A stretch of DNA of 63,110 bases, the filler included, from Pelomyxa schiedti (Eukaryota > Protista > Evosea), in NCBI GenBank assembly GCA_020536535.1. It is 5 parts of 5 records of this genome, joined end to end, with 100 filler letters (N's around TTAATTAATTAA, not from the genome) between each part and the next. Parts side by side here need not be neighbours in the genome. Positions count along the whole stretch, not along the records: positions 1 to 23,087 come from JAHLWZ010001061.1; 4 more parts are not named here. One strand, given 5' to 3'. This document shows, piece after piece, positions 491-12,937 of this stretch; position 1 is the first letter of the stretch; every line of letters begins with the position of its first letter. The position numbers and the translations under genes are program-made. The notes beneath the pieces are model-generated. The model did no database searches. It worked only from the letters and a program-made list of their open reading frames with translations, and was not told the DNA's origin.

Positions 491-2935
491 TCACAGAGCC
501 ACATTCTCAATGAGGAAGACGCGGAACTCTGAGTCTGCGCCTGAGCTGTCGGGTGCGTCAACAACGATGAGCTGGTTTGTTGATGGAATCCAGGAAGTCA
601 ACCTCACATACTTGCCAAATGTTGGGAGTGTGTTTCTGTAAGTGCCATCATAAACACCAGTGGTGGTGTCAAACACCCCGTCGATCTCCCCGCTGTCGTA
701 TGCCTTGCCAAAGTAGAACCTCCCACACACAACAAATGCAAAGCCAGTCTTCATCTTGATGCGAGGGACAGTCCACGTCTGCAAGATTGTGAGGGAGTCA
801 GGGTCCACCCTCGTGATGTGTATGTTGCCGTTGTTGGGTGGTGCGTGGACCACGTACAGCACACCCCCTGCATCAACATACCAGCAAATGTCTGTGTATC
901 CGTTCCAGGTCCACGGTGACTCGCCAGAGTGACCGGCGTTTGGGAGTGGTGCAGTTGCTACTGTTGACCCGTCGCTCACACGCACCTTGGTCATTGTGGC
1001 TGCATTGGCTGGGGTGCAGTACACGTGGCCGTTGTGCACAGCCTGGTATGTGCCACCGGGGTGGTTGGGCACGTCCTTGACTGTGAATTGCCTTGGGTTG
1101 GTGTTGTTGATGAAGCTGGTCATGCTTTCGAACTCCGTCAGCTGTGAAGTGTAGTAGTCACTGCCCCAGTACACTTTTCCGGTTGTGTTGTCAACAAACA
1201 GCTTCTGTGCCTGACGGGGCGTGGTCGAGGTCACCATCGAGCCAAGTTGGTTGAGTTCCCTCGTTGCCGCTTTGGGAACAAGAGAACCTGATGTTGAATT
1301 GTGAACAAGGCGACCAAGTGATGATGAAATTGTTCCACAAACGGCAGTTGAATCACATTCAAATCTCACCTGTTCGCGTTTTTTTTTGTGTCATTTCACT
1401 TTTTTTTTTTTTTTTTGGATGCGGAAAAGAGAGAGAGATACCTTCAATTCATTTGGTGCCAGAGAGTCATTCTGGGCACCTGAATCGCAAAGCTTTTTGA
1501 CACGAGAAGTGAGAGTGTCATTGACAGCCACGAGTTGGAGGTCAGTGAACCTCGTTGTTGCCTGTTGCGCATATTCTTGTGCTTCTTGTGCATCCTTCAT
1601 CTTGTTGTCACATCCTTCAATGTGTTCTTGGAATATCTTGAAGGGGTAACGCCGCATTGTCAGTGTGTGTGATTGGTGCGACAGAAGACATGCCTTTTTT
1701 GATGTTTCGGTGATTGTCTTCAGTTCCGAGAGCAGCTGTGCCTCCTTGGCATTGACAACTGCAACAATCTTGGCAAATTCAGTTCGTATCTCAGCCTCAA
1801 CGTTCTCAGAAAGTTCATCTGCGTTTTTGCAGCATCCCTTTGGTTTTTTTTTTTGTTGTCGTTGAATGGGACGGAAATGAGAGAACACACACGATTGCAG
1901 TGTGTTTCGAAAGTGAAAGCTTCTCCAAGCGCAATGATAACTTGGAGCACAGTGAGGCAATGTTCTCCTTGAACTTGGAGCTCAGGTCAGAGGAAAACAC
2001 AAAGTCGTGGTTCTTGTGGTCAATCAATCTGATATTGTTTACGGAGTTAGGAAAAACCCAAGGACGCAACAGGCCCGAAATCAGACAAAAGAAAAAGGAA
2101 CACACACGTGCAGTCACGGCAAATCAGTGACTTGTCAGTGTTGCAGTACAACCGCAGTTCCTCATGTGGATGCTTGGAACAAAGTGCTGGTTTGGGTGCC
2201 GCGGGTGTGACGCTCGTCTGTGTCCTGATTTGATCCACAGTCACAACCTGCATTCCCAAGTGTGTGAGAGTGTGAACTGGTTGGCTGGTGGGAAGCGTGG
2301 GTGGCGAGGGAGATAGATATAAAATAAACACAGCAGCGCTACATTGTGGGAGGCGGTCTTCCTCGCACGTGAGTGGTGTGCCTTGTCGTCGTTGCACAGG
2401 AACACCCCGCACGTTGGGCACCACCACGGCACGTCGTGTGATCCGCATTCCACGCACTCGGGAGGCGGCGCGGCCGTCGTCGTCGTCGTCGTGGTGGTGG
2501 TGGTCCCTGGTTGTTTGTGTGTCCCGCCCTCAGCAACAAGTGGAGCCAGGTCCAACAGGTGGCGCTTCCAAAGGTCCACTGGGAACCCCCCTTGCGGAAT
2601 TGCGGCCTGTCGACAGGTTGTGGTGTGTTTTTTTGTGACTGTTGGTTTATTTTTCGTAAAGTAAAGACACGCAGAGGGACCTGGAATTGGCACACAGGGC
2701 ACGTCAGTGACGACGATGTGGCGGAGTTGGGCGCGGAGGGGAGCACCCCTCGCGAACACCTGGTGACGCACTCGAGGCACAAACTGTGCAAACACGGCAG
2801 CAGCCTGGGGCGTCGTGCGTGGGGGTGATGGAAGAACTTTTAAAATTTCGGAACGGGAGTTGTTCACCTTGGGTCACGGAGGAACGAGGAGCAACACGGG
2901 CACGTTATTTGTGCGGTCACTTCCTTCTTGTCCAT
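491..2935 (-). CDS. TRIM-like protein copy A: RING + B-box + B-box + coiled coil + C-terminal olfactomedin-like domain (multi-exon)
   Basis: ATG at 2935 (MDKKEVTAQITCPCC...PRLLPCLHSLCLEC...CPVC, C3HC4 RING). B-box CVECGSHDVPWWCPTCGVFLCNDDKAHH; B-box CSKHPHEELRLYCNTDKSLICRDC..DHKNH; helical region. Last exon (491-1369) has OLF motifs GTYQAVHNG, LPNAG, W.W.GYTDI, GNIHITRVDPDSL...QTW, AFVVCG. Confidence 0.85.
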
Positions 2936-3022: not shown

Positions 3023-5396
3023 ATGAACAAGAAGGAAGTGATCTACCAAATAACGTGCCCATGTTGCTTGTCGTTCCTCCGTGACCCAAGGTGCCATCAT
3101 GGGATTCAAAAAAACTCCGTTCTCACACCCAACCATCAGGCTTCTGCCGTGTTTGCACACTTTGTGCCTCGAATGCATCCCTCGATGTTCGCGAAGCACC
3201 TCGACTGGTTCTCCGTTGCTCGCATACGCCGCGGAATGCCCTGTGTGTCACTCTCAGGTGTACGTTTCTTTCACTCCCACACTCACCCATTAGAGGACTA
3301 ACAACAACCGAAACCCGAAACACAACATAACTTTTCGACAGGCAGTCGCACCACCAGGGGGGTTCCCTGTGGACGAGTGGAAGAGAAGCATGTTGGCCTC
3401 GGTTCCACATGCTGTTTTTGGGAGTGGATCACACCAACCAGGCACCACGGCGACTGCGCCAGAATGCGGAGATTGCGGGGCACGCGAAGCCCAGTGGTGG
3501 TGCACAACGTGTAGCGCGTTTTTGTGCAACGATGACAAGGCACACCACTCACGTGCGAGGAAGACCGCCTCCCACAATGTAGCGCTGTGTTTATTTTATA
3601 TCTAACTCTCGCCACCAACCAACCAGCTCACTCACATACACGTCTAATGCAGGTTGTGACTGTGGCTCAACTCAGAACACAGACGAGTGTCACACCCGCG
3701 GCACCCAAACCAGCACTTTGTTCCAAGCATCCACATGAGGAACTGCGGTTGTACTGCAACACTGACAAGTCACTGATTTGCCGTGACTGCACGTGTGTGT
3801 TCCTTTTTCTGGTTTGGGAACCTGCTGTGCCCTTGGGTTGTTGGCTAACAACCCAAACAAACACAATTAGATTGATTGACCACAAGAACCACGACATTGT
3901 GTTTTCCTCTGACCTGAGCTCCAAGTTCAAGGAGAACATCGCCTCACTGTGCTCCAAGTTATCACTGCGCTTGGAGAAGCTTTCACTTTCGAAACACACT
4001 GCAATTGTGTGTATTTTCTCTCATTTCCGTCCCATTCAACGACAACAAAAAAAAAAACCAAAGGGATGCTGCAAAAACGTAGACGAAGTTTCAGAGAACG
4101 CTGAGGCGGAGATACGAACTGAATTTGCCAAGATTGTTGCAGTTGTCAATGCCAAGGAGGCTCAAATGCTCTCGGAACTTAAAAAAATCACCGAAACTGC
4201 GAAAAAGGCACGAACTTGTCTGTTGCACCAATCACACACACTGACAATGTGTTCACCCCCTCAAGATATTCCAAGAACACATTGAAGGATGTGACAACAA
4301 GATGAAGGATGCACAAGAGGCACAAGAATACGCACAACAGGCAACAACGAGGTTCACTGACCTCCAACTCGTGGCTGTCAATGACACTCTCACTTCTCGT
4401 GTCAAAAAGCTTTGCGATTCAGGTGCCCAGAATGACTCTCTGGCACCAAATGAATTGAAGGTATCTCTCTCTCTTTTCCGCATCCAAAAAAAAAAAAAAA
4501 AAGTGAAATGACACAAAAAAAAACGCGAACAGGTGAGATTTGAATGTGATTCAACTGCCGTTTGTGGAACAATTTCATCATCACTTGGTCGCCTTGTTCA
4601 CAATTCAACATCAGGTTCTCTTGTTCCCAAAGCGGCAACGAGGGAACTCAAACAACTTGGCTCGATGGTCCACTCGATCACACCCCGTCCTGGGGTGAGG
4701 TTATTTGTTGACAACTCAACTGGGAAAGTGTACTGGGATGGTGCATACCACCGTCGACAACTGACAGAGTTTGCGAACATGACCAGCTTCATCAACAACA
4801 CCAACCCAAGACAGTTCATACTCAAGGACGTGCCCAACCACCCCGGTGGCACATACCAGGCAGTGCACAACGGCCACGTGTACTGCACCCCAGCCAATGC
4901 AGCCACAATGACCAAGGTGCGTGTGAGTGACGGGTCAACAGTAGCAACTGCACCACTCCCAAACGCCGGTCACTCTGGCAAATCAACGTGGAGCTGGGGT
5001 GGAGGCACAGACATTTGCTGGTATGTTGATGCAGGGGGTGTGCTGTACGTGGTCCACGCACCACCCAACGAAGGCAACATACACATCACGAGGGTGGACC
5101 CTGACTCCCTCGCCATCTTGCAGACGTGGACTGTCCCTCGCATCAAGGCACGGACAGGATATGCATTTGTTGTGTGTGGGAAGTTCTACTTTGGAAAGTC
5201 GCACAACAGCAACGAAATCGACGGGGTGTTTGACACCACAACTGGTGATTATGATGACACTTACAGAAACACACTCCCGACATGCGGCATGCGTGTGGCT
5301 CTTACTTCGTGGATTCCATCAACAAACCAGCTCCTCGTCATCGAAGCTCCTGACGTATCGTTCCGCGTTTTCCTCTTCGACAATGTGGCTCTGTGA
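3023..5396 (+). CDS. TRIM-like protein copy B: RING + B-box + B-box + coiled coil + C-terminal olfactomedin-like domain (multi-exon)
   Basis: ATG at 3023 (MNKKEVIYQITCPCC), GT-AG intron 3091-3139, then LLPCLHTLCLEC...CPVC, two B-boxes, coiled coil and OLF exon 4533-5396. Inverted paralog of copy A. Confidence 0.85.
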
Positions 5397-5607
5397 GAGG
5401 AAGATAAAGAAAATTTTTTGTTTGGCAACGTCCACCTCGTGAGATTTTACGGTGGAGGTGTGGCTACCCAAGGGGACGTCATGCATTTGGCGTGGGAATC
5501 CAACTACTACTTGGCGCATGACCCACCTGACAGGACCAAGATGTGGGGACAGACCTAACCATCAGTTTGAGTTTCTAGGAAACCCGCAGCGTGGCTCCTC
5601 TTTTTTA

Positions 5608-7862
5608 ATGCTGAAAGAGCCGTGCCAGGATACCTCTTCCACCGTAACCGCGTCGTTGTCGAGCAAACAACAGGAGGCCGGCAGGGTCCTCATGATCTCG
5701 CGCGTCGCGTGGGAGTACGCGGTGCAGCCAGTCCTCGCGGCCTCGTACAGATCCCTCGAGCACGGGGACGTGGTGTGGGCGTTCGGCGCGGCGTCGGCCC
5801 TGTTCCCCCTCGTCGCCCTCGTGTGCCGCGGCGTCGCCGCCGCCCCCGTGGTGTTCAAGCACCTCGGCGACGAGGAGCCGCAGGGGCACTCCCGCCACTG
5901 GGACGTGAGGTGCGCCGCGCAGGCCGGCAGCCCCGCCTGCATCTCGTGGATCCTGAGGCACAAGCCCACGAGGAACAACACGAGGGAGTGCCTGAGCGTG
6001 CTGTGGGGGCTCTGCGGCGGCGGACACCTCGAGATGGCGCGGCAGCTCGTCGACGGCGACTGCGCGGCGGCGGGGACTGATGAGCGCCGGGCGGGCGGCC
6101 TTGGCTGCGATTATGGGAGGAGTGATGTGAGGTGGGTGAAGGAATCGGGGCTGGCGTGGCCCGTGGGTGAGAATGACCTGAGGGACGAGGTAAGAGCCAT
6201 TGATATCACTCCGGATGGGAGCGAGGATGAGACCTTGTTGTCAGAGGTGTGCAGAGGGGGGCACCTTGAGACAGCCAAGTGGGTTGTTGAGAGGTTCCGG
6301 CTGAGGGAGAGCTGGGAGCTTGCTGCTCCGTTTATGGCTGCTGTTCGTGCTGGGAAGCTCGAGGTGGCGAGGTGGTTGTGTGGGTTATGTGGGGTCGTTT
6401 GGGCTGTGAACACACTGGGGCTGAATTACCCAGTTAAGTTCTACTTTGAGGGAAACCTGGAGATGGTCCAGTGGCTGGTGGAGGTCTTCCCTGGAAGCTG
6501 GAGTTTGGAAAAACCTGAAAAGTGTTACTCCCCTGTGGGACTTGCTGCTGGTGTCATGTGTAACAAGAAGATTACCCTGAAGGAACGCGTTGAGGCCTTC
6601 CAGTGGCTGAGGTCACACTTCAGCTTTGACCTACAAGAAGTCCAGACGGTTGCCACAGGTACACGAGGGGTGGAGTCACTCATGTGGTTGATAGAGACCC
6701 ACGGTGTGCAGCCGCCAGTGAGCATGTGGTGGTGGAGGGAGGTGGAGGGTGTAGAATCTGTTGAGTGGCTTGTAAAGCACCTCCCAATGTCAGTTACAGC
6801 TGCCAATTTTCTTGAAGTTTGTGGAAACATCAAGGATGACTTGCACTGCGTGAGAGTGCTGCTGTCAGAGGTGGTCAATCTCACTCCAACCGACCATGAA
6901 GAAGCACTTATAGAAGCACTGTCCAATGGCAACATCAAAATCGCCAACTGGCTGGAAGCAACCTTCCATATCATGGAGAAAAATGTCAATGTCGCTGCTC
7001 CCAAGGCGAATGCCACTCTAATTTCTCTGTGCAAGAACTACAGCAACTACTGTGACACAAGGGCCATCAGGTGGTTCTTTGAGCACGTATCTGCAGATAA
7101 AATAGATGAGAGTTCCCTGGCAAGAGCAGTACGCCACACACGGTTCTCTGTCTTGTCATTCTTGCTTGAGTTGTTCCACTTTTCACCTACCAGTAAGTCG
7201 CGGCAGGATCAGCGCAAGTGGAGTAAAGTACTGCTGGGAGCAGTGGTCACTGGGTGGACTCCAATTTCAAGTCAGCTTATTTCATGTAGGGCTGTTGACA
7301 GTAGTCATGCTATAAACTGTGTGATTCAGTCTTGTCATTCCTGCTTCATCTCCAGCAAAGCTATGAAAAGGGTAATACACGAGTATCACCTGGAGAACCA
7401 GCCAGAATACATCAAATACAACAACAATGTTCTTATAGAATTGATCAATGCAAATAACACAAGGTGTGCAGAGTGGCTGATCCACAACTTTGAGGTCACC
7501 CTGGAAGAGGTATGCCTTTTCTTTGTACAATAAACGCAACTCTAACAAAAGCTAAAAAAAAAAAAAAAAAAAAAAAAACACAGCTGGGACATCCAAGCTG
7601 CGCTAACAAGGAGATTTCATTTCCGATGTGGAAGATGCTGCTGAGGGTGTTCCCAGAGATAACAGCTGACTTTATACGTGATCACCTGTGGTGGGCACTA
7701 ATGTCCTCACCCGTCCACATTGAGTTTGCAATGAAGGCAGTTGGGATCACACAGGCCCATGTAATGCACCGTCTGACTAATGAAATAGAACAAGTGCTGC
7801 CCAAGGAAACACTGTTATGGATTCTGAAGCTTAAGATGTCACGTCCTCATCACAAATGGTGA
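5608..7862 (+). CDS. Degenerate ankyrin-like repeat protein of an expanded family
   Basis: Long ORF 5452-7533 with repeated GGHLEMARQLV / GGHLETAKWVV / AGKLEVARWL / GNLEMVQWLV units. An intron near 7510-7583 joins the last exon ending at 7862. Start ATG 5608 is tentative. Confidence 0.7.
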
Positions 7863-9388: not shown

Positions 9389-10408
9389 TCAGTCATAGAG
9401 TCTCACCATCGATCTACCAACCTTGGATTTGCCAAAGTCAAGATACTCACCAGTGGTGTCAATGTACAATGAGTACCCGAGGCTGTGCTGCACCCAAGTA
9501 TTGCCCTCGCTGTCAGAACACTTCCTGATCACAGATATAATTTGACCAGGTGCCAGATGCCCCACCACGGTGCCAGATATACAAGGTACAGCCCGGACCC
9601 TCAGTTGTGTGTTTGGAATGGTCACTTTGTATCTCCTTGTTGCCGGCTTTGTTGGGGATTGATTATTGGCATGGCGCAGAGAAGCGGATAGAGCGGCAAC
9701 TTGATTGCTCAAGTCTGTGACTTGCCTGTGCAGATGTACAATCCTGACAAAAGGGCATGTTGCTTCGTGTGTCAATACGTCGGCCCTGGGGCCTGAAAAT
9801 GGGCACCCTTGAGGTTTCCCAGGGCAAGTTTGGTTGCAAGTGGTGTGTATGTGGTTAAGAATGTCACCCCGGCTTACAGTGATCCCGCACTGTGGGCATT
9901 TAATCACAAGTGAGTTCAAGGATGCAAGAAGTGACCTCATCTGTAGCAGTCTGTCAGAGCATTACTTCTATTTTACCAATACAATTTTTGTTGCTTGAAC
10001 ATAATACCCCACCAACATAACACCTGGTTCTACAATAATGCTTATATAATAAGCATATATCTAACATCACATTAAAAAAAAAAATATACACTATGCAAAG
10101 AATAGATGGGGGGAAAAAAAAAACACTGAACTAAACAATGTTTGGCGGGCTTCGAATTTACTCACCATCACAGGTGCTCTTGTGGTTGCGTCCCAGGCCT
10201 TTCTACACATTGGGCACGCGGGCAGGCTCGCGACGCAGGAACGGCAGAAGGTGTTGCCGCACTGGTCGTCGCGGTGCTCGACGGGGTTTACGAGGGGCAT
10301 CAGGCACACTGGGCACAGCAGCGTGTCGCTCACCGAGCTCGGGTATTGCGCGTGGCTCAGAACCACCTCCAGCTCGTTGTTCGGACCATCAGCCGACCCT
10401 CGTTGCAT
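9389..10408 (-). CDS. RING + TRAF-type zinc finger + coiled coil + SH3b-like domain E3 ligase
   Basis: CPVCLMPLVNPVEH...CGNTFCRSCV....CPMC RING; CPQC...HIHTTC...CPGKPQGCPF....HEATCPF zf-TRAF; heptad segment; LRVRAVPCISGTVVGHLAPGQIISVI....GNTWVQH SH3b-like domain. Confidence 0.75.
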
Positions 10409-10740
10409 TTCGTACCCGAATCGAAGCGCAGATCATCTCAGATTGCTGAATGCTCGCCCTGCGGAAAGAGGGGAAGGAATCCGCGAAGTTCCATGCACAT
10501 GAGCGACAGAGCCATAGCAAGAACAAACACAGAAGAGGGGCTCAGGTCCCATAATCCCAGTACGGTGAAAAACAGTGTTACCATCAGGGGAGGAGAATGC
10601 TCAAATTCTCTGAGGAGTACTTGTCCTTTTAAGACCGAGCTCAAATGCAGTCACGGTTATCCAATATCTATCCATCATCTTGCATTCAAGCATATTTCTA
10701 TCCCTGCCCATTGCCTTCCATACTCATGCAGCTCCATTTG

Positions 10741-11135
10741 AGAGTAGCTGGGAGAAGGATCCTTGTGGGGCAGGGATCAGACAGGGGGGAGCCCTGTTCT
10801 GAATTTCACTTTCTCTGGTCTGGACGCAGAGGGGGCGCCTCTGTACTTTGTCCAGGCCTCACTACTAATGAGGAAGAAACCCAGGGGGCTCCTGAATTTT
10901 CTCCCTCAAAACTTGTGTTGAGCGGGCGTGGGCCCTGGGGGGCGCCTAGGCCCATAGTCCTACTAAACTGGGAAAACCCCATCACCTTCTGAAATCGGGC
11001 GGGTCCCGGGGCTCCTTGCGCGAGTTCCCCCTTTCAAGGGGGTAACTTGCGCTCTCCCAGGAGTTTCGGGACTTGATCCGAAAGCTCCGTGTTGTTCAGC
11101 CTCTGGTCTGAGAGGGTGAGCACTCCTCTTTTTTT
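10741..11135 (+). ncRNA. Candidate structured non-coding RNA (unassigned), possibly a Pol III transcript
   Basis: About 12 consecutive hairpins in a GC-rich intergenic island. G-U wobbles pair on the + strand. A long-range helix joins 10748-10755 with 11053-11060, and a T7 run lies at 11129-11135. Confidence 0.55.
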
Positions 11136-11334
11136 GTGTTGGTCCCTCCCGTGTTAACATCACGGCTGGAACAGTTGGACTTCATCAGGATTTTGTTTTC
11201 ATTTGGTGAGTTGCGTGGTTCAAGGCAATAATCTAGCCTTTGGCGCGTGTTTAAAGTGGCTTGCACAGTATTGGAAGAACAGTTGAAAGAAAAGAATAAG
11301 TTCTACTTGTCTGATTTACTTGCCAATCCACTTC

Positions 11335-12937
11335 TTAGAAAATTCGGGCATAGTCAGGGTGTTTTCGGCCGATAGTCTCCAAGATGTTGTTTACAAGGTA
11401 GCATGCACGTTCAATGTGGTGATCCCAGAGTTCTTGTTCACTACCGGCTGTACAATTGTGAGGGGTTTTAATATTGGAGGAAGGCAAACTTGTTTCAAAG
11501 ATGATCAATCTGGAGATCTGGTCAATTGAGCCACCCATTCGTGCTTCACCAATCATCTTAGCAGCAAACCTCTCTGCCAATTCAGGTGAGACACCAAGAA
11601 GCAGGCCGAGTTCGTCAAACGATATATTGTTGTACAAACGGGATGCGGATAGAAGGTTATGTTCAAGGAATGCACTGAGGGAAAGAATGCAAGTTAGACC
11701 CCAACAAGTGAAATATCGTGAAGAATACTGTTGAACCACAGTGAGACCTTCGGACTTGATTCCCACTTGATGCGGTGGCAGTCCAGCAGAGAATCTTGCA
11801 GCCTCATCGGGTTTCAAAACATTTTCCAAATACCTGCGTCAGGTAAATGGGAAATCTAAAAAAGAGGAATCCACATTTTCTTGAGAATTCCATAGTGATC
11901 AAGGTATTGGGTCCGTTCATCTTTGTACAGAGTGGCCAACATACGAGACCGCTGAGGTCCAGCTTCTGCCAAAATGGCGGAGTTCACTGCTTGTTGCAGG
12001 GCCATTCGACGTTCCTTCATTACACGGTTAACATACACTCGCCGACTTGAGTTAAAGCATACTTCATCTGGACCATTCTGTGAGATATCGTAATAATGAA
12101 TGGCTGCCTTGATAAATTGTTGGTTCAAATCAAGTACTTGTGCAAAACATCTCTGATTTGTATATTATCAGTACTCAATGTCAGATTAAAAAAGGTGCTA
12201 AAAGGAACCTTGTATTGATGCACAAGGACAGGTTTGGGGCACTTGTGAACAGTAGCTGAAGCCCGTGTAATGTACGTGAGGGCAACGTCAGCCTTCCCTG
12301 TCTGCAGAATTAAAGTAGCAATCTTCACAAACAACTCAGTCTTAGCTTCAGCATCCACCATCCTGGGAAATGAAAGCAAATTAAAATCACACCTAACTGA
12401 CTCTCTGGAACCTTGTGCTGGAGTCTACTGGGATAGCCATAAGTTGTTCAGCAGCCTCCTGCGCACGGCCTTCTGCTTCGTACAAGCGTGCCAAATTTCC
12501 TCGAAGGTTGACAATCTACAGAAAAGATAAGTATCGTATAACAAAGCAAGAACTTACATGCTCCTCGAATGCTACTGTGCGTGGTTGCAGCTTGCTAATA
12601 GCGTGTAGTGCCATTTGCACCATCATTTGTTGGGGGAGAGATTGAACTTTTGCAACGAAATCAGAGAGCAAGGGCCGAGACACAACTAATGGGGTTTTTT
12701 CCTCAGACACTAGGATTTGAGAGGGAAAACCAAATGAGCATTGAACGTTGAGATACGGTATTGACAATCAAATTTCTATGAAGAAAATAGGGGCCTACTG
12801 TGGTCAATGAATTTCATGATGTCAGGCGCAGAGGCCCGGGAGATGGCATCGTTTAGGAGAGTTGTGTACTCCTTGGACTTCGCCTTATGGTCACTCAATC
12901 CCGCTATTTGCACGAGTTTCCTCCCGAAATCAGCCAT
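11335..12937 (-). CDS. COPS4: COP9 signalosome subunit 4
   Basis: LQPRTVAFEE, LAEAGPQRSRMLATLYKDER, EHNLLSASRLYNNISFDELGLLL...GSIDQI (PCI domain). Multi-exon. Confidence 0.93.

What the first reader, a model, noticed from the sequence alone, without database searches (positions are those of the whole stretch)
10741..11135. Unassigned ~390-nt structured RNA with six G-rich pentaloop hairpins
Seen on the + strand: hairpins 10758-10778 (loop UGGGG), 10779-10800 (GGGAG), 10817-10858 (GGGCG), 10882-10894 (GGGCU), 10929-10954 (GGGCG) and 10996-11008 (CGGGU). Both GGGCG hairpins are followed by a small hairpin containing CUACUAA. There is also a 16-bp stem at 11018-11052, an enclosing helix CUGGGAGA/UCUCCCAG, two 3' hairpins (11060-11088, 11093-11122) and a U7 run. 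Stem sequences differ while loops recur, which suggests selection on structure. I could not find U1/U2/U4/U5/U6, SRP, tRNA or clear RNase P/MRP signatures. Inference: a Pol III RNA presenting repeated protein-binding loops, by analogy to CsrB-type sponges or 7SK-like scaffolds. A divergent telomerase/RNase MRP RNA or a SINE are alternatives.
Basis: partly seen in the sequence, partly recalled or inferred. Interest (0 to 1): 0.82.

Follow-up and report, generated by a model that had tools for sequence, protein, structure and literature searches.

The report
New Pol III RNA family in Pelomyxa
The flagged stretch is the 3' three-quarters of a real, previously undescribed non-coding RNA gene about 524 nt long. 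It is one of four diverged copies in the anaerobic amoeba Pelomyxa schiedti. Each copy has a promoter and terminator like those of this genome's RNA polymerase III-type genes (U6, RNase P/MRP RNA), a long stem joining its two ends, and three or four hairpins with the same G-rich five-base loop; its function is unknown.

Summary
The genome is Pelomyxa schiedti (Archamoebae). The RNA runs from about 10612 to 11135 (524 nt), so it starts 129 nt upstream of the finding.

Evidence for a gene:
- A CCCAYAA promoter motif lies exactly 64 nt upstream. It sits 63-68 nt before this genome's U6, RNase MRP and RNase P genes (53 nt at one U6 copy whose Rfam match begins about 12 nt earlier).
- A T7 run ends the RNA.
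- Four paralogues exist (C1061, C854, C811, C815; 524-604 nt). Among the three whose flanks were compared, similarity is confined to promoter, RNA and T-run.
- The ends are 74-93% identical and form a roughly 42-bp terminal rod with six compensatory pairs.
- The middle is only 43-59% identical, yet carries 3-4 hairpins of the form GG[GGGMG or GGGCU]CC with covarying stems.
- The nine best genome-wide hits of a hairpin model are all in this family, and the tenth revealed the fourth member.

No Rfam family matches. U6, SRP, RNase P and RNase MRP RNAs are all found elsewhere in the genome. There is no telomere template, and it is not a SINE.

Best reading: a lineage-specific Pol III scaffold RNA that displays several identical binding loops. 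A minority reading is an oversized vault/TEP1 RNA, because the genome encodes TEP1 and three major vault proteins (MVPs) but has no recognisable vault RNA.

The parts
10547..10558 (+). Upstream promoter element TCCCATAATCCC (DUSE/USE-like). Its CCCAYAA core starts exactly 64 nt before the RNA start.
   Evidence: The spacing is 64 nt in all four paralogues. CCCAYAA lies 63-68 nt before the Rfam-defined starts of five of six U6 copies, RNase MRP and RNase P, and 53 nt before the sixth U6 copy, whose match begins about 12 nt earlier. Similarity among three paralogues upstream of the RNA is limited to this element. In Dictyostelium, DUSE lies about 60 nt upstream of ncRNA genes (PMC7919456).
10612..11135 (+). 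Full RNA gene, 524 nt including the terminal U-run.
   Evidence: [quoted passage not shown] The full-length fold has z = -6.1. Paralogues fold at z = -8.9, -5.2 and -6.8.
10612..10656 (+). 5' strand of the terminal rod P1. It begins GAGGAGUACUUG.
   Evidence: It pairs with 11087-11128 in the MFE folds of all four copies and in the consensus structures. There are 35 consensus pairs. Six show changes on both sides (alignment columns 8, 13, 16, 17, 18, 22).
10634..10664 (+). Near-invariant 5' block. The 31 nt are identical in three copies, and GAGCUCAAAUGC at 10637-10648 is identical in all four. It includes the 5' side of an asymmetric internal loop in P1.
   Evidence: The 26-nt core occurs only three times in the 52-Mb genome. 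A 5'-domain model finds exactly four loci at E of about 1e-14 or better, and the next hit has E about 0.8.
10657..10690 (+). Single-stranded linker after P1. It carries UAUCCA motifs (10658-10663 and 10669-10674) and UUGCAUU.
   Evidence: UAUCCA occurs twice in the C1061, C854 and C811 copies, with variable spacing. The region is unpaired in the consensus structure. No function has been tested.
10780..10798 (+). Hairpin H1, loop GGGAG closed by GG/CC.
10817..10858 (+). Hairpin H2. The apical part is 10826-10844, with loop GGGCG closed by GG/CC.
   Evidence: It scores 25.8 bits with hairpin model R1.
10869..10908 (+). Hairpin H3. The apical part is 10882-10894, with loop GGGCU closed by GG/CC, on an extended GA-rich/CU-rich stem.
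10924..10960 (+). Hairpin H4. The apical part is 10936-10948, with loop GGGCG closed by GG/CC.
   Evidence: It scores 24.6 bits with R1.
10995..11081 (+). Long 3' hairpin of about 37 bp, with the 16-bp stem 11018-11052 at its tip.
   Evidence: The MFE helices are listed. A hairpin at the same position, with a different sequence and compensatory pairs, occurs in all copies.
11087..11128 (+). 3' strand of the terminal rod P1. It contains the conserved CCGUGUUGUUCA and ends in ACUCCUC.
   Evidence: The last 50-58 nt were the only part that BLAST could link to two of the paralogues.
11129..11135 (+). T7 run, read as a Pol III terminator and an oligo-U 3' tail.
   Evidence: The copies end in T7, T6, T9 and T10, directly after P1. 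U6, SRP, MRP and RNase P genes here also end in T6 or longer. None of the four RNAs has an internal T5+ run.

Best explanation
Window 10612-11135 (+) is one of four paralogous genes in Pelomyxa schiedti for a lineage-specific structured non-coding RNA of 524-604 nt that has not been classified before.

Shown:
- Each gene has the genome's ncRNA promoter motif (CCCAYAA) exactly 64 nt before the RNA start.
- Each ends in a T6-T10 run directly after the terminal stem.
- Both features are shared with this genome's U6, RNase P and RNase MRP genes, so RNA polymerase III is the likely polymerase.
- The 5' and 3' ends pair into a rod of about 42 bp. Its outer half keeps structure but not sequence. Its inner half, including an asymmetric internal loop (CUCAAAU opposite UUCAR), is almost invariant in sequence.
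- The central 430-500 nt have diverged to 43-59% identity but keep 3-4 hairpins, spaced about 40-70 nt apart (about 50 in this copy). Each has the invariant apex GG[GGGMG or GGGCU]CC on a covarying stem. A long 3' hairpin is also kept.

Inferred:
- The RNA is the stable scaffold of an RNP.
- The invariant loop in the rod and the oligo-U tail anchor core proteins. La is the expected partner of the tail; the partner of the loop is unknown.
- The identical G-rich pentaloops act as several docking sites for one further ligand, either a loop-specific RNA-binding protein or a C-rich RNA. The RNA would then assemble or sequester several copies of that ligand.
For: Organism: an ORF in the window hits only Pelomyxa schiedti proteins, and the assembly size and scaffold count match the published genome exactly.

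Gene signals: the CCCAYAA spacing is 64 nt in all four copies, against 63-68 nt for five U6 copies, MRP and RNase P (53 nt at the sixth U6 copy). All of these genes end in T6 or longer, and none of the four RNAs has an internal T5+ run. Among the three copies whose flanks were aligned, similarity stops outside promoter, RNA and T-run.

Structure: fold z-scores are -6.1, -8.9, -5.2 and -6.8. P1 has 35 consensus pairs, six of them compensatory. Twelve hairpins have an invariant apex and covarying stems (covariation score 0.595 against 0.186 shuffled; 0 of 500 shuffles reach it; slid controls score lower).

Specificity: the nine best genome-wide hits of the hairpin model are family hairpins, and the tenth revealed the fourth member. 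The 5'-domain model finds exactly four loci.

Conservation pattern: the ends are 74-93% identical and the middle 43-59%.

Not a known RNA: there are no Rfam hits. U6, MRP, RNase P and SRP RNAs are found elsewhere.
Against: - No expression data could be consulted, so transcription, the exact ends and the polymerase are inferred from sequence alone.
- No homologue outside this genome could be sought. No eukaryotic genome collection was available, and two metagenome scans were negative or gave chance hits. All covariation therefore comes from four paralogues of one species.
- The extended promoter motif TCCCAYAATCCC occurs at about 389 loci, many without an obvious ncRNA downstream. On its own it is not specific for Pol III or for ncRNA genes.
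- Each RNA contains one to three internal T4 runs, which terminate Pol III in some organisms.
- No binding partner is known, so the scaffold or multivalent-docking function rests on analogy.
- The genome-wide model searches scored only 150 of thousands of first-pass candidates. More diverged members or isolated hairpins could have been missed.
Confidence: 0.72

Rival explanations
1. It is the vault RNA of Pelomyxa: an oversized TEP1-bound Pol III RNA packaged in vault particles. The conserved rod would be the TEP1/TROVE binding site, and the variable centre would be a greatly expanded version of the variable centre of vault RNAs.
For: The genome encodes three MVP paralogues. Its only TROVE-domain gene has the TEP1 architecture: TROVE, DUF5920, DUF4062, a NACHT-like P-loop, APAF1_C and WD40 repeats including a TEP1 propeller hit. 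No Rfam Vault match exists anywhere in the genome, so the vault RNA is unassigned. From background knowledge, vault RNAs are Pol III RNAs whose ends pair, with a variable centre, several paralogues and a U tail; TEP1 is needed for their stability (cited in PMC12547018). From memory only, and not tested: the conserved blocks AGCUCA..GGUUA and GUUGUUC resemble the box A and box B regions of human vtRNA1-1.
Against: Known vault RNAs are 88-140 nt and have a type-2 promoter with internal A and B boxes (PMC7904556). This RNA is 524-604 nt. Its blocks differ from the textbook box A consensus at 4 of 9 specified positions and from box B at 2-3 of 9 (my own reading). The Rfam Vault model gives nothing, even on the isolated 5' and 3' ends at E up to 10. 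No screen for other orphan small Pol III RNAs was made, so a normal-sized vault RNA may exist unnoticed.
Confidence: 0.13
2. It is a precursor or carrier processed into smaller functional RNAs, for example by Dicer-like cleavage of the rod or of the hairpins. In that case the 0.5-kb form would not be the functional RNA.
For: The RNA contains a perfect or near-perfect rod of about 42 bp, a 3' hairpin of about 37 bp and several 6-11-bp hairpins. Weak miRNA-precursor-like cmscan hits to the 3' hairpin merely reflect its long stem.
Against: What is conserved is the loop sequences and the internal loop of the rod, not any stem strand of about 21-27 nt. Stems covary freely, which is the opposite of what selection on a small-RNA sequence would produce.
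Confidence: 0.05
3. The four G5-G6 tracts act as an intramolecular G-quadruplex switch rather than as hairpin loops, or alternate with them.
For: Each copy has four to six runs of five or more G, about 50 nt apart.
Against: The conserved unit includes the CC that pairs with the first two Gs, as well as covarying stems (0 of 500 shuffles). That pattern selects for the hairpin. A quadruplex would not need complementary flanks.
Confidence: 0.04
4. It is the telomerase RNA. A TERT gene is present and TEP1 is telomerase-associated.
For: A Telomerase_RBD match shows that TERT is present, so a telomerase RNA must exist and is unassigned. Pol III telomerase RNAs driven by a USE are known in plants and ciliates (PMC12133305). 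In ciliate telomerase RNAs the 5' and 3' ends also pair (background knowledge).
Against: None of the three copies tested (C1061, C854, C811) contains any 6-mer permutation of CCCUAA. Only stray AAUCCC-type 6-mers occur, at non-homologous positions; the fourth copy was read by eye only. No conserved 1.5-repeat motif occurs in the single-stranded conserved regions. Four diverged paralogues would be unusual for a telomerase RNA. TTAGGG arrays do exist in the genome.
Confidence: 0.02
5. It is a SINE or other mobile or repeated DNA, or a chance GC-rich structure, and not a gene.
For: It is multi-copy and ends in a T-run. A short inverted fragment of the 3' end lies just downstream of the C854 copy.
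Against: There are only four copies. Each carries an external promoter motif at exactly the same spacing. In the three copies whose flanks were aligned there is no similarity beyond promoter and terminator, and no target-site duplications were seen there. The copies are 50-66% identical overall, yet with compensatory changes and invariant loops. Fold z-scores range from -5 to -9.
Confidence: 0.02

Closest known systems
Vault RNA (vtRNA), the Pol III RNA of the vault/TEP1 RNP
   Same: A likely Pol III transcript with a U-tail. The 5' and 3' ends pair into a conserved panhandle around a variable centre, and there are several paralogues per genome. The host genome has TEP1 and three MVP genes but no recognisable vault RNA.
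   Different: It is four to six times longer than any known vault RNA (88-140 nt; PMC7904556). The promoter is upstream rather than convincing internal A and B boxes. The Rfam Vault model gives no match. The array of G-rich pentaloop hairpins has no vault RNA counterpart.
Dictyostelid Class I RNAs (Amoebozoa)
   Same: An amoebozoan ncRNA gene family with a DUSE-type motif about 60 nt upstream and a T-run terminator. A stem joins the 5' and 3' ends, a conserved sequence motif sits next to the 5' stem strand, and the rest is variable (PMC7919456).
   Different: Class I RNAs are 42-65 nt, have a short stem, a specific 11-nt motif and tens of copies, and are reported to be restricted to Dictyostelia. 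This RNA is 524-604 nt with a 42-bp rod, four copies, different motifs and the pentaloop array.
Y RNAs (Ro60 RNP)
   Same: From background knowledge: Pol III with an upstream (type 3) promoter, a conserved terminal stem with an internal loop or bulge as the protein site, a divergent internal region that binds other proteins, three to four paralogues, and an oligo-U tail bound by La.
   Different: Y RNAs are about 100 nt. No Ro60-type gene was found, because the only TROVE locus is TEP1-like. Rfam Y_RNA gives no hit.
7SK snRNA
   Same: A Pol III type-3 scaffold RNA of 330-450 nt that sequesters proteins on hairpins, with a 3' hairpin and U tail (background knowledge).
   Different: There is no Rfam 7SK or Arthropod_7SK hit. 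The GAUC/GAUC hairpin seen at 10758-10778 in this copy is absent from the paralogues. 7SK and HEXIM are known only from animals.
CsrB/RsmZ-type bacterial protein sponges
   Same: They work alike in principle: many hairpins with one conserved G-rich loop motif on variable stems, giving multivalent capture of one RNA-binding protein.
   Different: These are bacterial RNAs with GGA loops bound by CsrA. There is no homology, and no partner is known here. The resemblance is an analogy of design only.

Membership tests
Vault RNA | Length of about 88-140 nt | tested here: not met
   The four copies are 524, 538, 531 and 604 nt. The size range is taken from PMC7904556.
Vault RNA | Internal Pol III box A and box B (type 2 promoter) | tested here: not met
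   Compared by eye with the textbook consensuses TRGCNNAGTGG and GGTTCGANNCC, the 5' block has 4 of 9 mismatches and the 3' block has 2-3 of 9. The two blocks lie about 450 nt apart. The promoter motif is upstream.
Vault RNA | Match to the Rfam Vault covariance model (RF00006) | tested here: not met
   There is no hit at E up to 10 on the locus, on two paralogues, or on the isolated ends. There is none in the whole genome at E up to 1.
Vault RNA | Physical association with TEP1 and MVP particles | not testable with these tools
   The partner genes are present: a TEP1-like gene on C807 and three MVP genes. Immunoprecipitation or fractionation is needed.
Y RNA | Ro60 partner present, RNA of about 100 nt, Rfam Y_RNA match | tested here: not met
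   The single TROVE locus is TEP1-like, not Ro60. The RNA is more than 500 nt. Rfam gives no hit.
7SK snRNA | Rfam 7SK match and a conserved 5' hairpin with GAUC repeats | tested here: not met
   There is no hit. The GAUC hairpin occurs only in the window copy.
Telomerase RNA | Template of at least 1.3-1.5 telomere repeats in a conserved single-stranded region near the 5' end | tested here: not met
   No CCCUAA permutation occurs in the three copies scanned, and none was seen on reading the fourth. No conserved short tandem motif is present. TTAGGG arrays and a TERT gene exist in the genome.
RNase MRP / RNase P RNA | Match to RF00030 or RF00009, and normally a single gene per genome | tested here: not met
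   MRP lies at C811:110023-110515 (81 bits) and RNase P at C676:50003-50354 (91 bits). Neither model hits this locus.
SRP RNA | Match to an SRP covariance model | tested here: not met
   Six SRP RNA matches of about 280 nt lie elsewhere, five of them above the Rfam cut-off. There is no SRP hit at this locus.
Dictyostelid Class I RNA | Length of 42-65 nt, a short terminal stem, a conserved 11-nt motif, and DUSE about 60 nt upstream | tested here: not met
   Only the DUSE-like spacing and the general 'ends paired' layout are shared. Size, stem length and motifs differ. The family is reported to be restricted to Dictyostelia.
SINE / retroposon | Many dispersed copies, an internal promoter, target-site duplications, similarity independent of flanking promoter | tested here: not met
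   There are four copies. The external promoter motif sits at a fixed 64 nt. In the three copies aligned, flanks are unrelated and show no duplications.
Pol III type-3-like gene of this genome (operational class) | CCCAYAA about 64 nt upstream of the start, a T6+ terminator, and no internal T5+ run | tested here: met
   All four copies meet this. So do U6 (six copies examined), MRP and RNase P. The polymerase itself was not tested.

The most novel reading that the evidence does not exclude
This would be a categorically new eukaryotic RNP RNA, specific to Pelomyxa or the Archamoebae. It would be a Pol III scaffold of about 0.5 kb whose invariant rod loop recruits a core protein. Its array of three or four identical GG[GGGMG]CC pentaloop hairpins would multimerise or titrate a loop-specific factor, for example a zinc-knuckle or other G-loop-binding protein, or a C-rich RNA. 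That would make it a eukaryotic counterpart of the CsrB-type sponge design, unrelated to vault, Y or 7SK RNAs.
Probability: 0.4. Interest if true: 0.75.

Novelty: new variant of a known kind. Interest (0 to 1): 0.62.

Why it matters
Almost nothing is known about non-coding RNAs in Archamoebae, the group that includes Entamoeba. The Pelomyxa genome paper contains none of the terms searched for non-coding RNA, snRNA or telomeres. This family is unusually large for a Pol III product. Its modular design is clear: an invariant protein-site-like loop in a 42-bp rod, plus repeated identical loops on freely covarying stems. That design gives an immediate handle for pull-downs.

It also brings an open question within reach. 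The genome has TEP1, three major vault proteins and TERT, but no identified vault RNA or telomerase RNA. No vault RNA of an amoebozoan came up in the papers consulted, although vaults are studied in Dictyostelium. Testing this RNA against TEP1 and vaults would either reveal a radically expanded vault RNA or define a new RNP.

The promoter rule (CCCAYAA at -64, with a T-run terminator) offers a practical way to list further ncRNA genes in this genome.

Tried and rejected
- Rfam at gathering score on the whole window gave 0 hits. At E up to 10 on the locus, on two paralogues and on the isolated 5' and 3' ends, it gave only chance-level miRNA, snoRNA or leader hits.
- tRNA or tmRNA: none.
- Coding potential: ORFs overlapping the RNA have no Pfam hit. 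The 115-aa ORF is not on record as a called gene.
- U6, RNase MRP, RNase P and SRP are all found elsewhere in the genome.
- Telomerase RNA: no template.
- I first read the conserved upstream block as a PSE-type promoter. I dropped this once the CCCAYAA spacing and the 5'-3' pairing showed the block is the RNA's own 5' end.
- Searches for more members:
  - A 26-mer with up to 3 mismatches found three copies.
  - A paired-loop pattern found only family members plus GC-rich noise equal to the control.
  - BLAST with the fourth copy found only itself.
  - The 5'-domain model found four loci.
- Homologues elsewhere: the metagenome scan with the 5' 20-mer gave 0 hits. The scan with the 3' 19-mer gave 43 hits, all chance matches; 41 are one locus, mostly on gut-metagenome contigs. 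No eukaryotic genome collection or relatives of this genome were available.
- Rfam Vault across the whole genome: none.
- Literature searches on Pelomyxa, Entamoeba/Mastigamoeba ncRNAs and vault RNA in amoebae found no description of such an RNA.
PMC6816085 was not held.
Full report
**What is at the coordinates**

The 395-nt stretch 10741-11135 folds much better than dinucleotide shuffles on both strands. The z-score is -5.08 on the + strand at -190 kcal/mol, and -4.85 on the - strand at -162 kcal/mol. The + strand gains from many G-U pairs. Rfam gives no match at gathering score over the whole 23 kb. At E up to 10 on 10500-11400 it gives only chance-level hits. There are no tRNA genes, and ORFs overlapping the region have no Pfam domain.

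**Organism**

Neighbouring ORFs carry olfactomedin (OLF), B-box, ankyrin, TRAF and PCI domains. The OLF ORF finds only proteins named Pelomyxa schiedti, at 85-49% identity. The assembly searched (52,367,397 bases in 5,337 contigs) matches the published P. schiedti assembly of 52.4 Mb in 5,337 scaffolds (PMC8887013). A term search of that paper found no mention of non-coding RNA, snRNA or telomeres.

**Paralogues and true gene limits**

- I first took that block for a promoter. Its 26-nt core occurs only three times in the genome.
- I then located U6 (about 20 copies), RNase MRP and RNase P RNA genes with Rfam models and compared their upstream regions.
- All of them carry CCCAYAA upstream of the RNA start, at 63-68 nt in five U6 copies, MRP and RNase P, and at 53 nt in the sixth U6 copy, whose match begins about 12 nt earlier. 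All end in T6 or longer.
- In the family, TCCCAYAATCCC lies so that CCCAYAA starts exactly 64 nt before GAGGAGUACUUG in every copy.
- That 5' sequence is complementary to the last bases before the T-run.
- The RNA therefore starts at about 10612, not 10741, and is 524 nt long. The 'promoter-like' block is the RNA's own 5' domain.
- The motif and its spacing resemble the Dictyostelium upstream sequence element. That element lies about 60 nt upstream of ncRNA genes and serves both Pol II and Pol III (PMC7919456).
- Among the three paralogues first found, similarity upstream is limited to this element and vanishes right after the T-run. The conserved unit is therefore promoter plus RNA plus terminator, with no sign of a mobile element.

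**A fourth member**

A covariance model of the 21-nt hairpin apex was run on the genome. Its nine best hits were all hairpins of the three known copies. The tenth, on C815, lies inside a fourth and more diverged copy of 604 nt. That copy again has CCCACAA exactly 64 nt upstream, a variant 5' block, the conserved 3' strand and a T10 run. A sequence model of the 5' 55 nt finds exactly these four loci, at E from 1.6e-16 to 3.6e-14, and the next hit has E about 0.8. BLAST with the fourth copy finds only itself. These genome searches scored only 150 of several thousand first-pass candidates, so still more diverged members cannot be excluded.

**Architecture**

All four full-length RNAs fold with z from -5.2 to -8.9.

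1. *Terminal rod.* Positions 1-45 pair with the 42 nt before the U-run (window 10612-10656 with 11087-11128).
   - The four-sequence consensus has 35 pairs.
   - Six pairs changed on both sides, for example A-U to G-C at position 8, U-A to C-G at 16 and C-G to U-A at 18.
   - Several more changed through G-U.
   - The outer half varies in sequence. The inner half is nearly invariant and contains an asymmetric internal loop (CUCAAAU opposite UUCAR).
2. *Linker.* A single-stranded linker follows, with repeated UAUCCA in three copies.
3. *Diverged centre.* The centre is only 43-59% identical, against 74-93% for the ends. It still carries hairpins GG[GGGAG, GGGCG or GGGCU]CC at matching positions: four each in three copies and three in the fourth, 15 in all.
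   - Across the 12 hairpins tested, the two closing G-C pairs and the first three loop Gs are invariant.
   - The next four stem pairs covary: 86.5% of cells are paired against 63.5% when shuffled, and the covariation score is 0.595 against 0.186.
   - No shuffle out of 500 reached the observed values, and all slid controls are far lower.
It sits at the same position in all copies with different sequence.
5. *U-run.*

The local 3' hairpins compete with the rod, and the covariation supports the rod.

**What it is not**

| Candidate | Result |
|---|---|
| RNase MRP RNA | Found elsewhere, 81 bits |
| RNase P RNA | Found elsewhere, 91 bits |
| SRP RNA | Six matches elsewhere (five above the cut-off) |
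| U6 | About 20 copies elsewhere |
| Telomerase RNA | TERT is present and TTAGGG arrays exist, but no CCCUAA permutation in the three copies scanned and no conserved 1.5-repeat motif |
| 7SK | No Rfam hit; the GAUC hairpin is unique to the window copy |
| Y RNA | The only TROVE-domain gene is TEP1-like, so no Ro60 is evident |
| SINE | Four copies, fixed external promoter, unrelated flanks in the three copies aligned |

**The vault lead**

The genome has three MVP genes and a gene with the TEP1 architecture: TROVE, DUF5920, DUF4062, a NACHT-like P-loop, APAF1_C and WD40 repeats. No Rfam Vault match exists anywhere in the genome. A vault RNA is therefore expected and unassigned, and this family shares the general vault RNA layout.

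Against this, known vault RNAs are 88-140 nt with internal A and B boxes (PMC7904556). The conserved blocks here fit those boxes poorly. The Vault model finds nothing, even on the isolated ends. I recall a resemblance of the two conserved blocks to the box A and box B regions of human vtRNA1-1. That is memory only, and I could not test it, because no vault RNA sequence was available from a tool. I give this reading about 13%.

**Mechanism**

*Shown by sequence:* a gene family with Pol III-type signals; a covarying terminal rod with an invariant internal loop; repeated invariant pentaloops on covarying stems; and a hairpin motif whose top-scoring genome-wide matches lie almost only in this family.

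*Inferred:* a stable RNP scaffold. The rod loop and the U-tail would bind core proteins, and the three or four identical G-rich loops would give multivalent docking or sequestration of one ligand. The design resembles CsrB-type sponges and 7SK- or Y-type scaffolds without being homologous to them. The pattern of selection (loops fixed, stems free) argues against a small-RNA precursor and against a pure G-quadruplex reading.

**Limits**

- No expression data could be used.
- No relatives could be searched. Two metagenome scans were empty or gave chance hits.
- All covariation comes from four paralogues in one genome.
- The extended promoter motif is very common: 389 sites against 8 in the control, many without an obvious ncRNA downstream. 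The polymerase assignment therefore rests mainly on the T-run and on the parallel with U6, MRP and RNase P.
- The full-length covariance model could not be built, because the tool has a 400-column limit.

**Verdict**

This is a real and well-delimited ncRNA gene family that has not been described.

Noticed in passing
Genome-wide; in the window at 10547-10558: The 12-mer TCCCAYAATCCC occurs 389 times in the 52-Mb genome, against 8 for the reversed control. The shorter CCCAYAA precedes U6, MRP, RNase P and SRP RNA genes. Many of the 30 sampled sites have no obvious ncRNA or T-run downstream, so it may be a general promoter element in Pelomyxa, or partly carried by a repeat.
   Followed up: partly
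G000:C118 and C135 (L103, L104, L109, L110): Several TCCCACAATCCC sites share a further 50 nt or so of similar sequence downstream (..ttgtacggcttgtcgt..gaacatgacattcacact..), and later GTAATT.TCAAACACCTTT. This looks like a separate small repeated family or gene family that uses the same motif.
   Followed up: no
G000:C811:110023-110515: The RNase MRP RNA match is 493 nt long, against a 266-position Rfam model, so it is unusually large. It lies on the same contig as one paralogue of the new family, about 54 kb away.
   Followed up: no
G000 SRP RNA loci (L019-L022): There are six SRP RNA matches (five above the Rfam cut-off). In the four copies examined, CCCAYAA lies only 14-22 nt before the start of the Rfam alignment, instead of about 64. 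The real 5' end may therefore lie some 45 nt inside the model alignment, which could indicate an aberrant or reduced Alu domain.
   Followed up: no
G000:C807:26546-31999 (L083); C352, C810, C516; C931:32777-33290: A TEP1-like gene (TROVE, DUF5920, DUF4062, NACHT-like, APAF1_C, WD40), three major vault protein paralogues and a TERT RNA-binding-domain match are all present. No vault RNA or telomerase RNA has been identified for them.
   Followed up: partly
Genome-wide: Arrays of (GGGATT)n/(AATCCC)n, which served as the reversed control pattern, are about seven times more frequent (21 hits) than (TTAGGG)n (3 hits). The true telomere repeat of P. schiedti was not established.
   Followed up: no
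L002:1403-1459 (+), about 45 nt beyond the terminator of the C854 paralogue, on the opposite strand: A fragment of about 55 nt resembles the family's 3' end, including GGAGGTTGGGTACTCC and a T7 run. It lies tail-to-tail with the real gene, just downstream of what looks like the end of a protein-coding ORF. It may be a decayed partial copy or a shared bidirectional terminator. It explains the weak miRNA-like Rfam hits there.
   Followed up: partly
Window 491-1369 (-), 3587-4285 (+), 4533-5396 (+), 5452-7533 (+), 9389-9940 (-): This is a cluster of olfactomedin-domain, B-box, ankyrin and TRAF-zinc-finger ORFs. OLF and B-box occur fused in a Pelomyxa paralogue (P0001). It suggests an expanded OLF/B-box gene family in this amoeba, which is unexpected for a domain best known from animals.
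   Followed up: no
Window 10590-10611: Just upstream of the RNA start there is a partial echo of the 5' end: GAGGAGAATGCTCAAATTCT, compared with GAGGAGTAC...GAGCTCAAATGC. The C811 copy has GAGGAGAATTTTT at the same place. Its meaning is unknown; it could be a promoter-proximal element or a duplication remnant.
   Followed up: no
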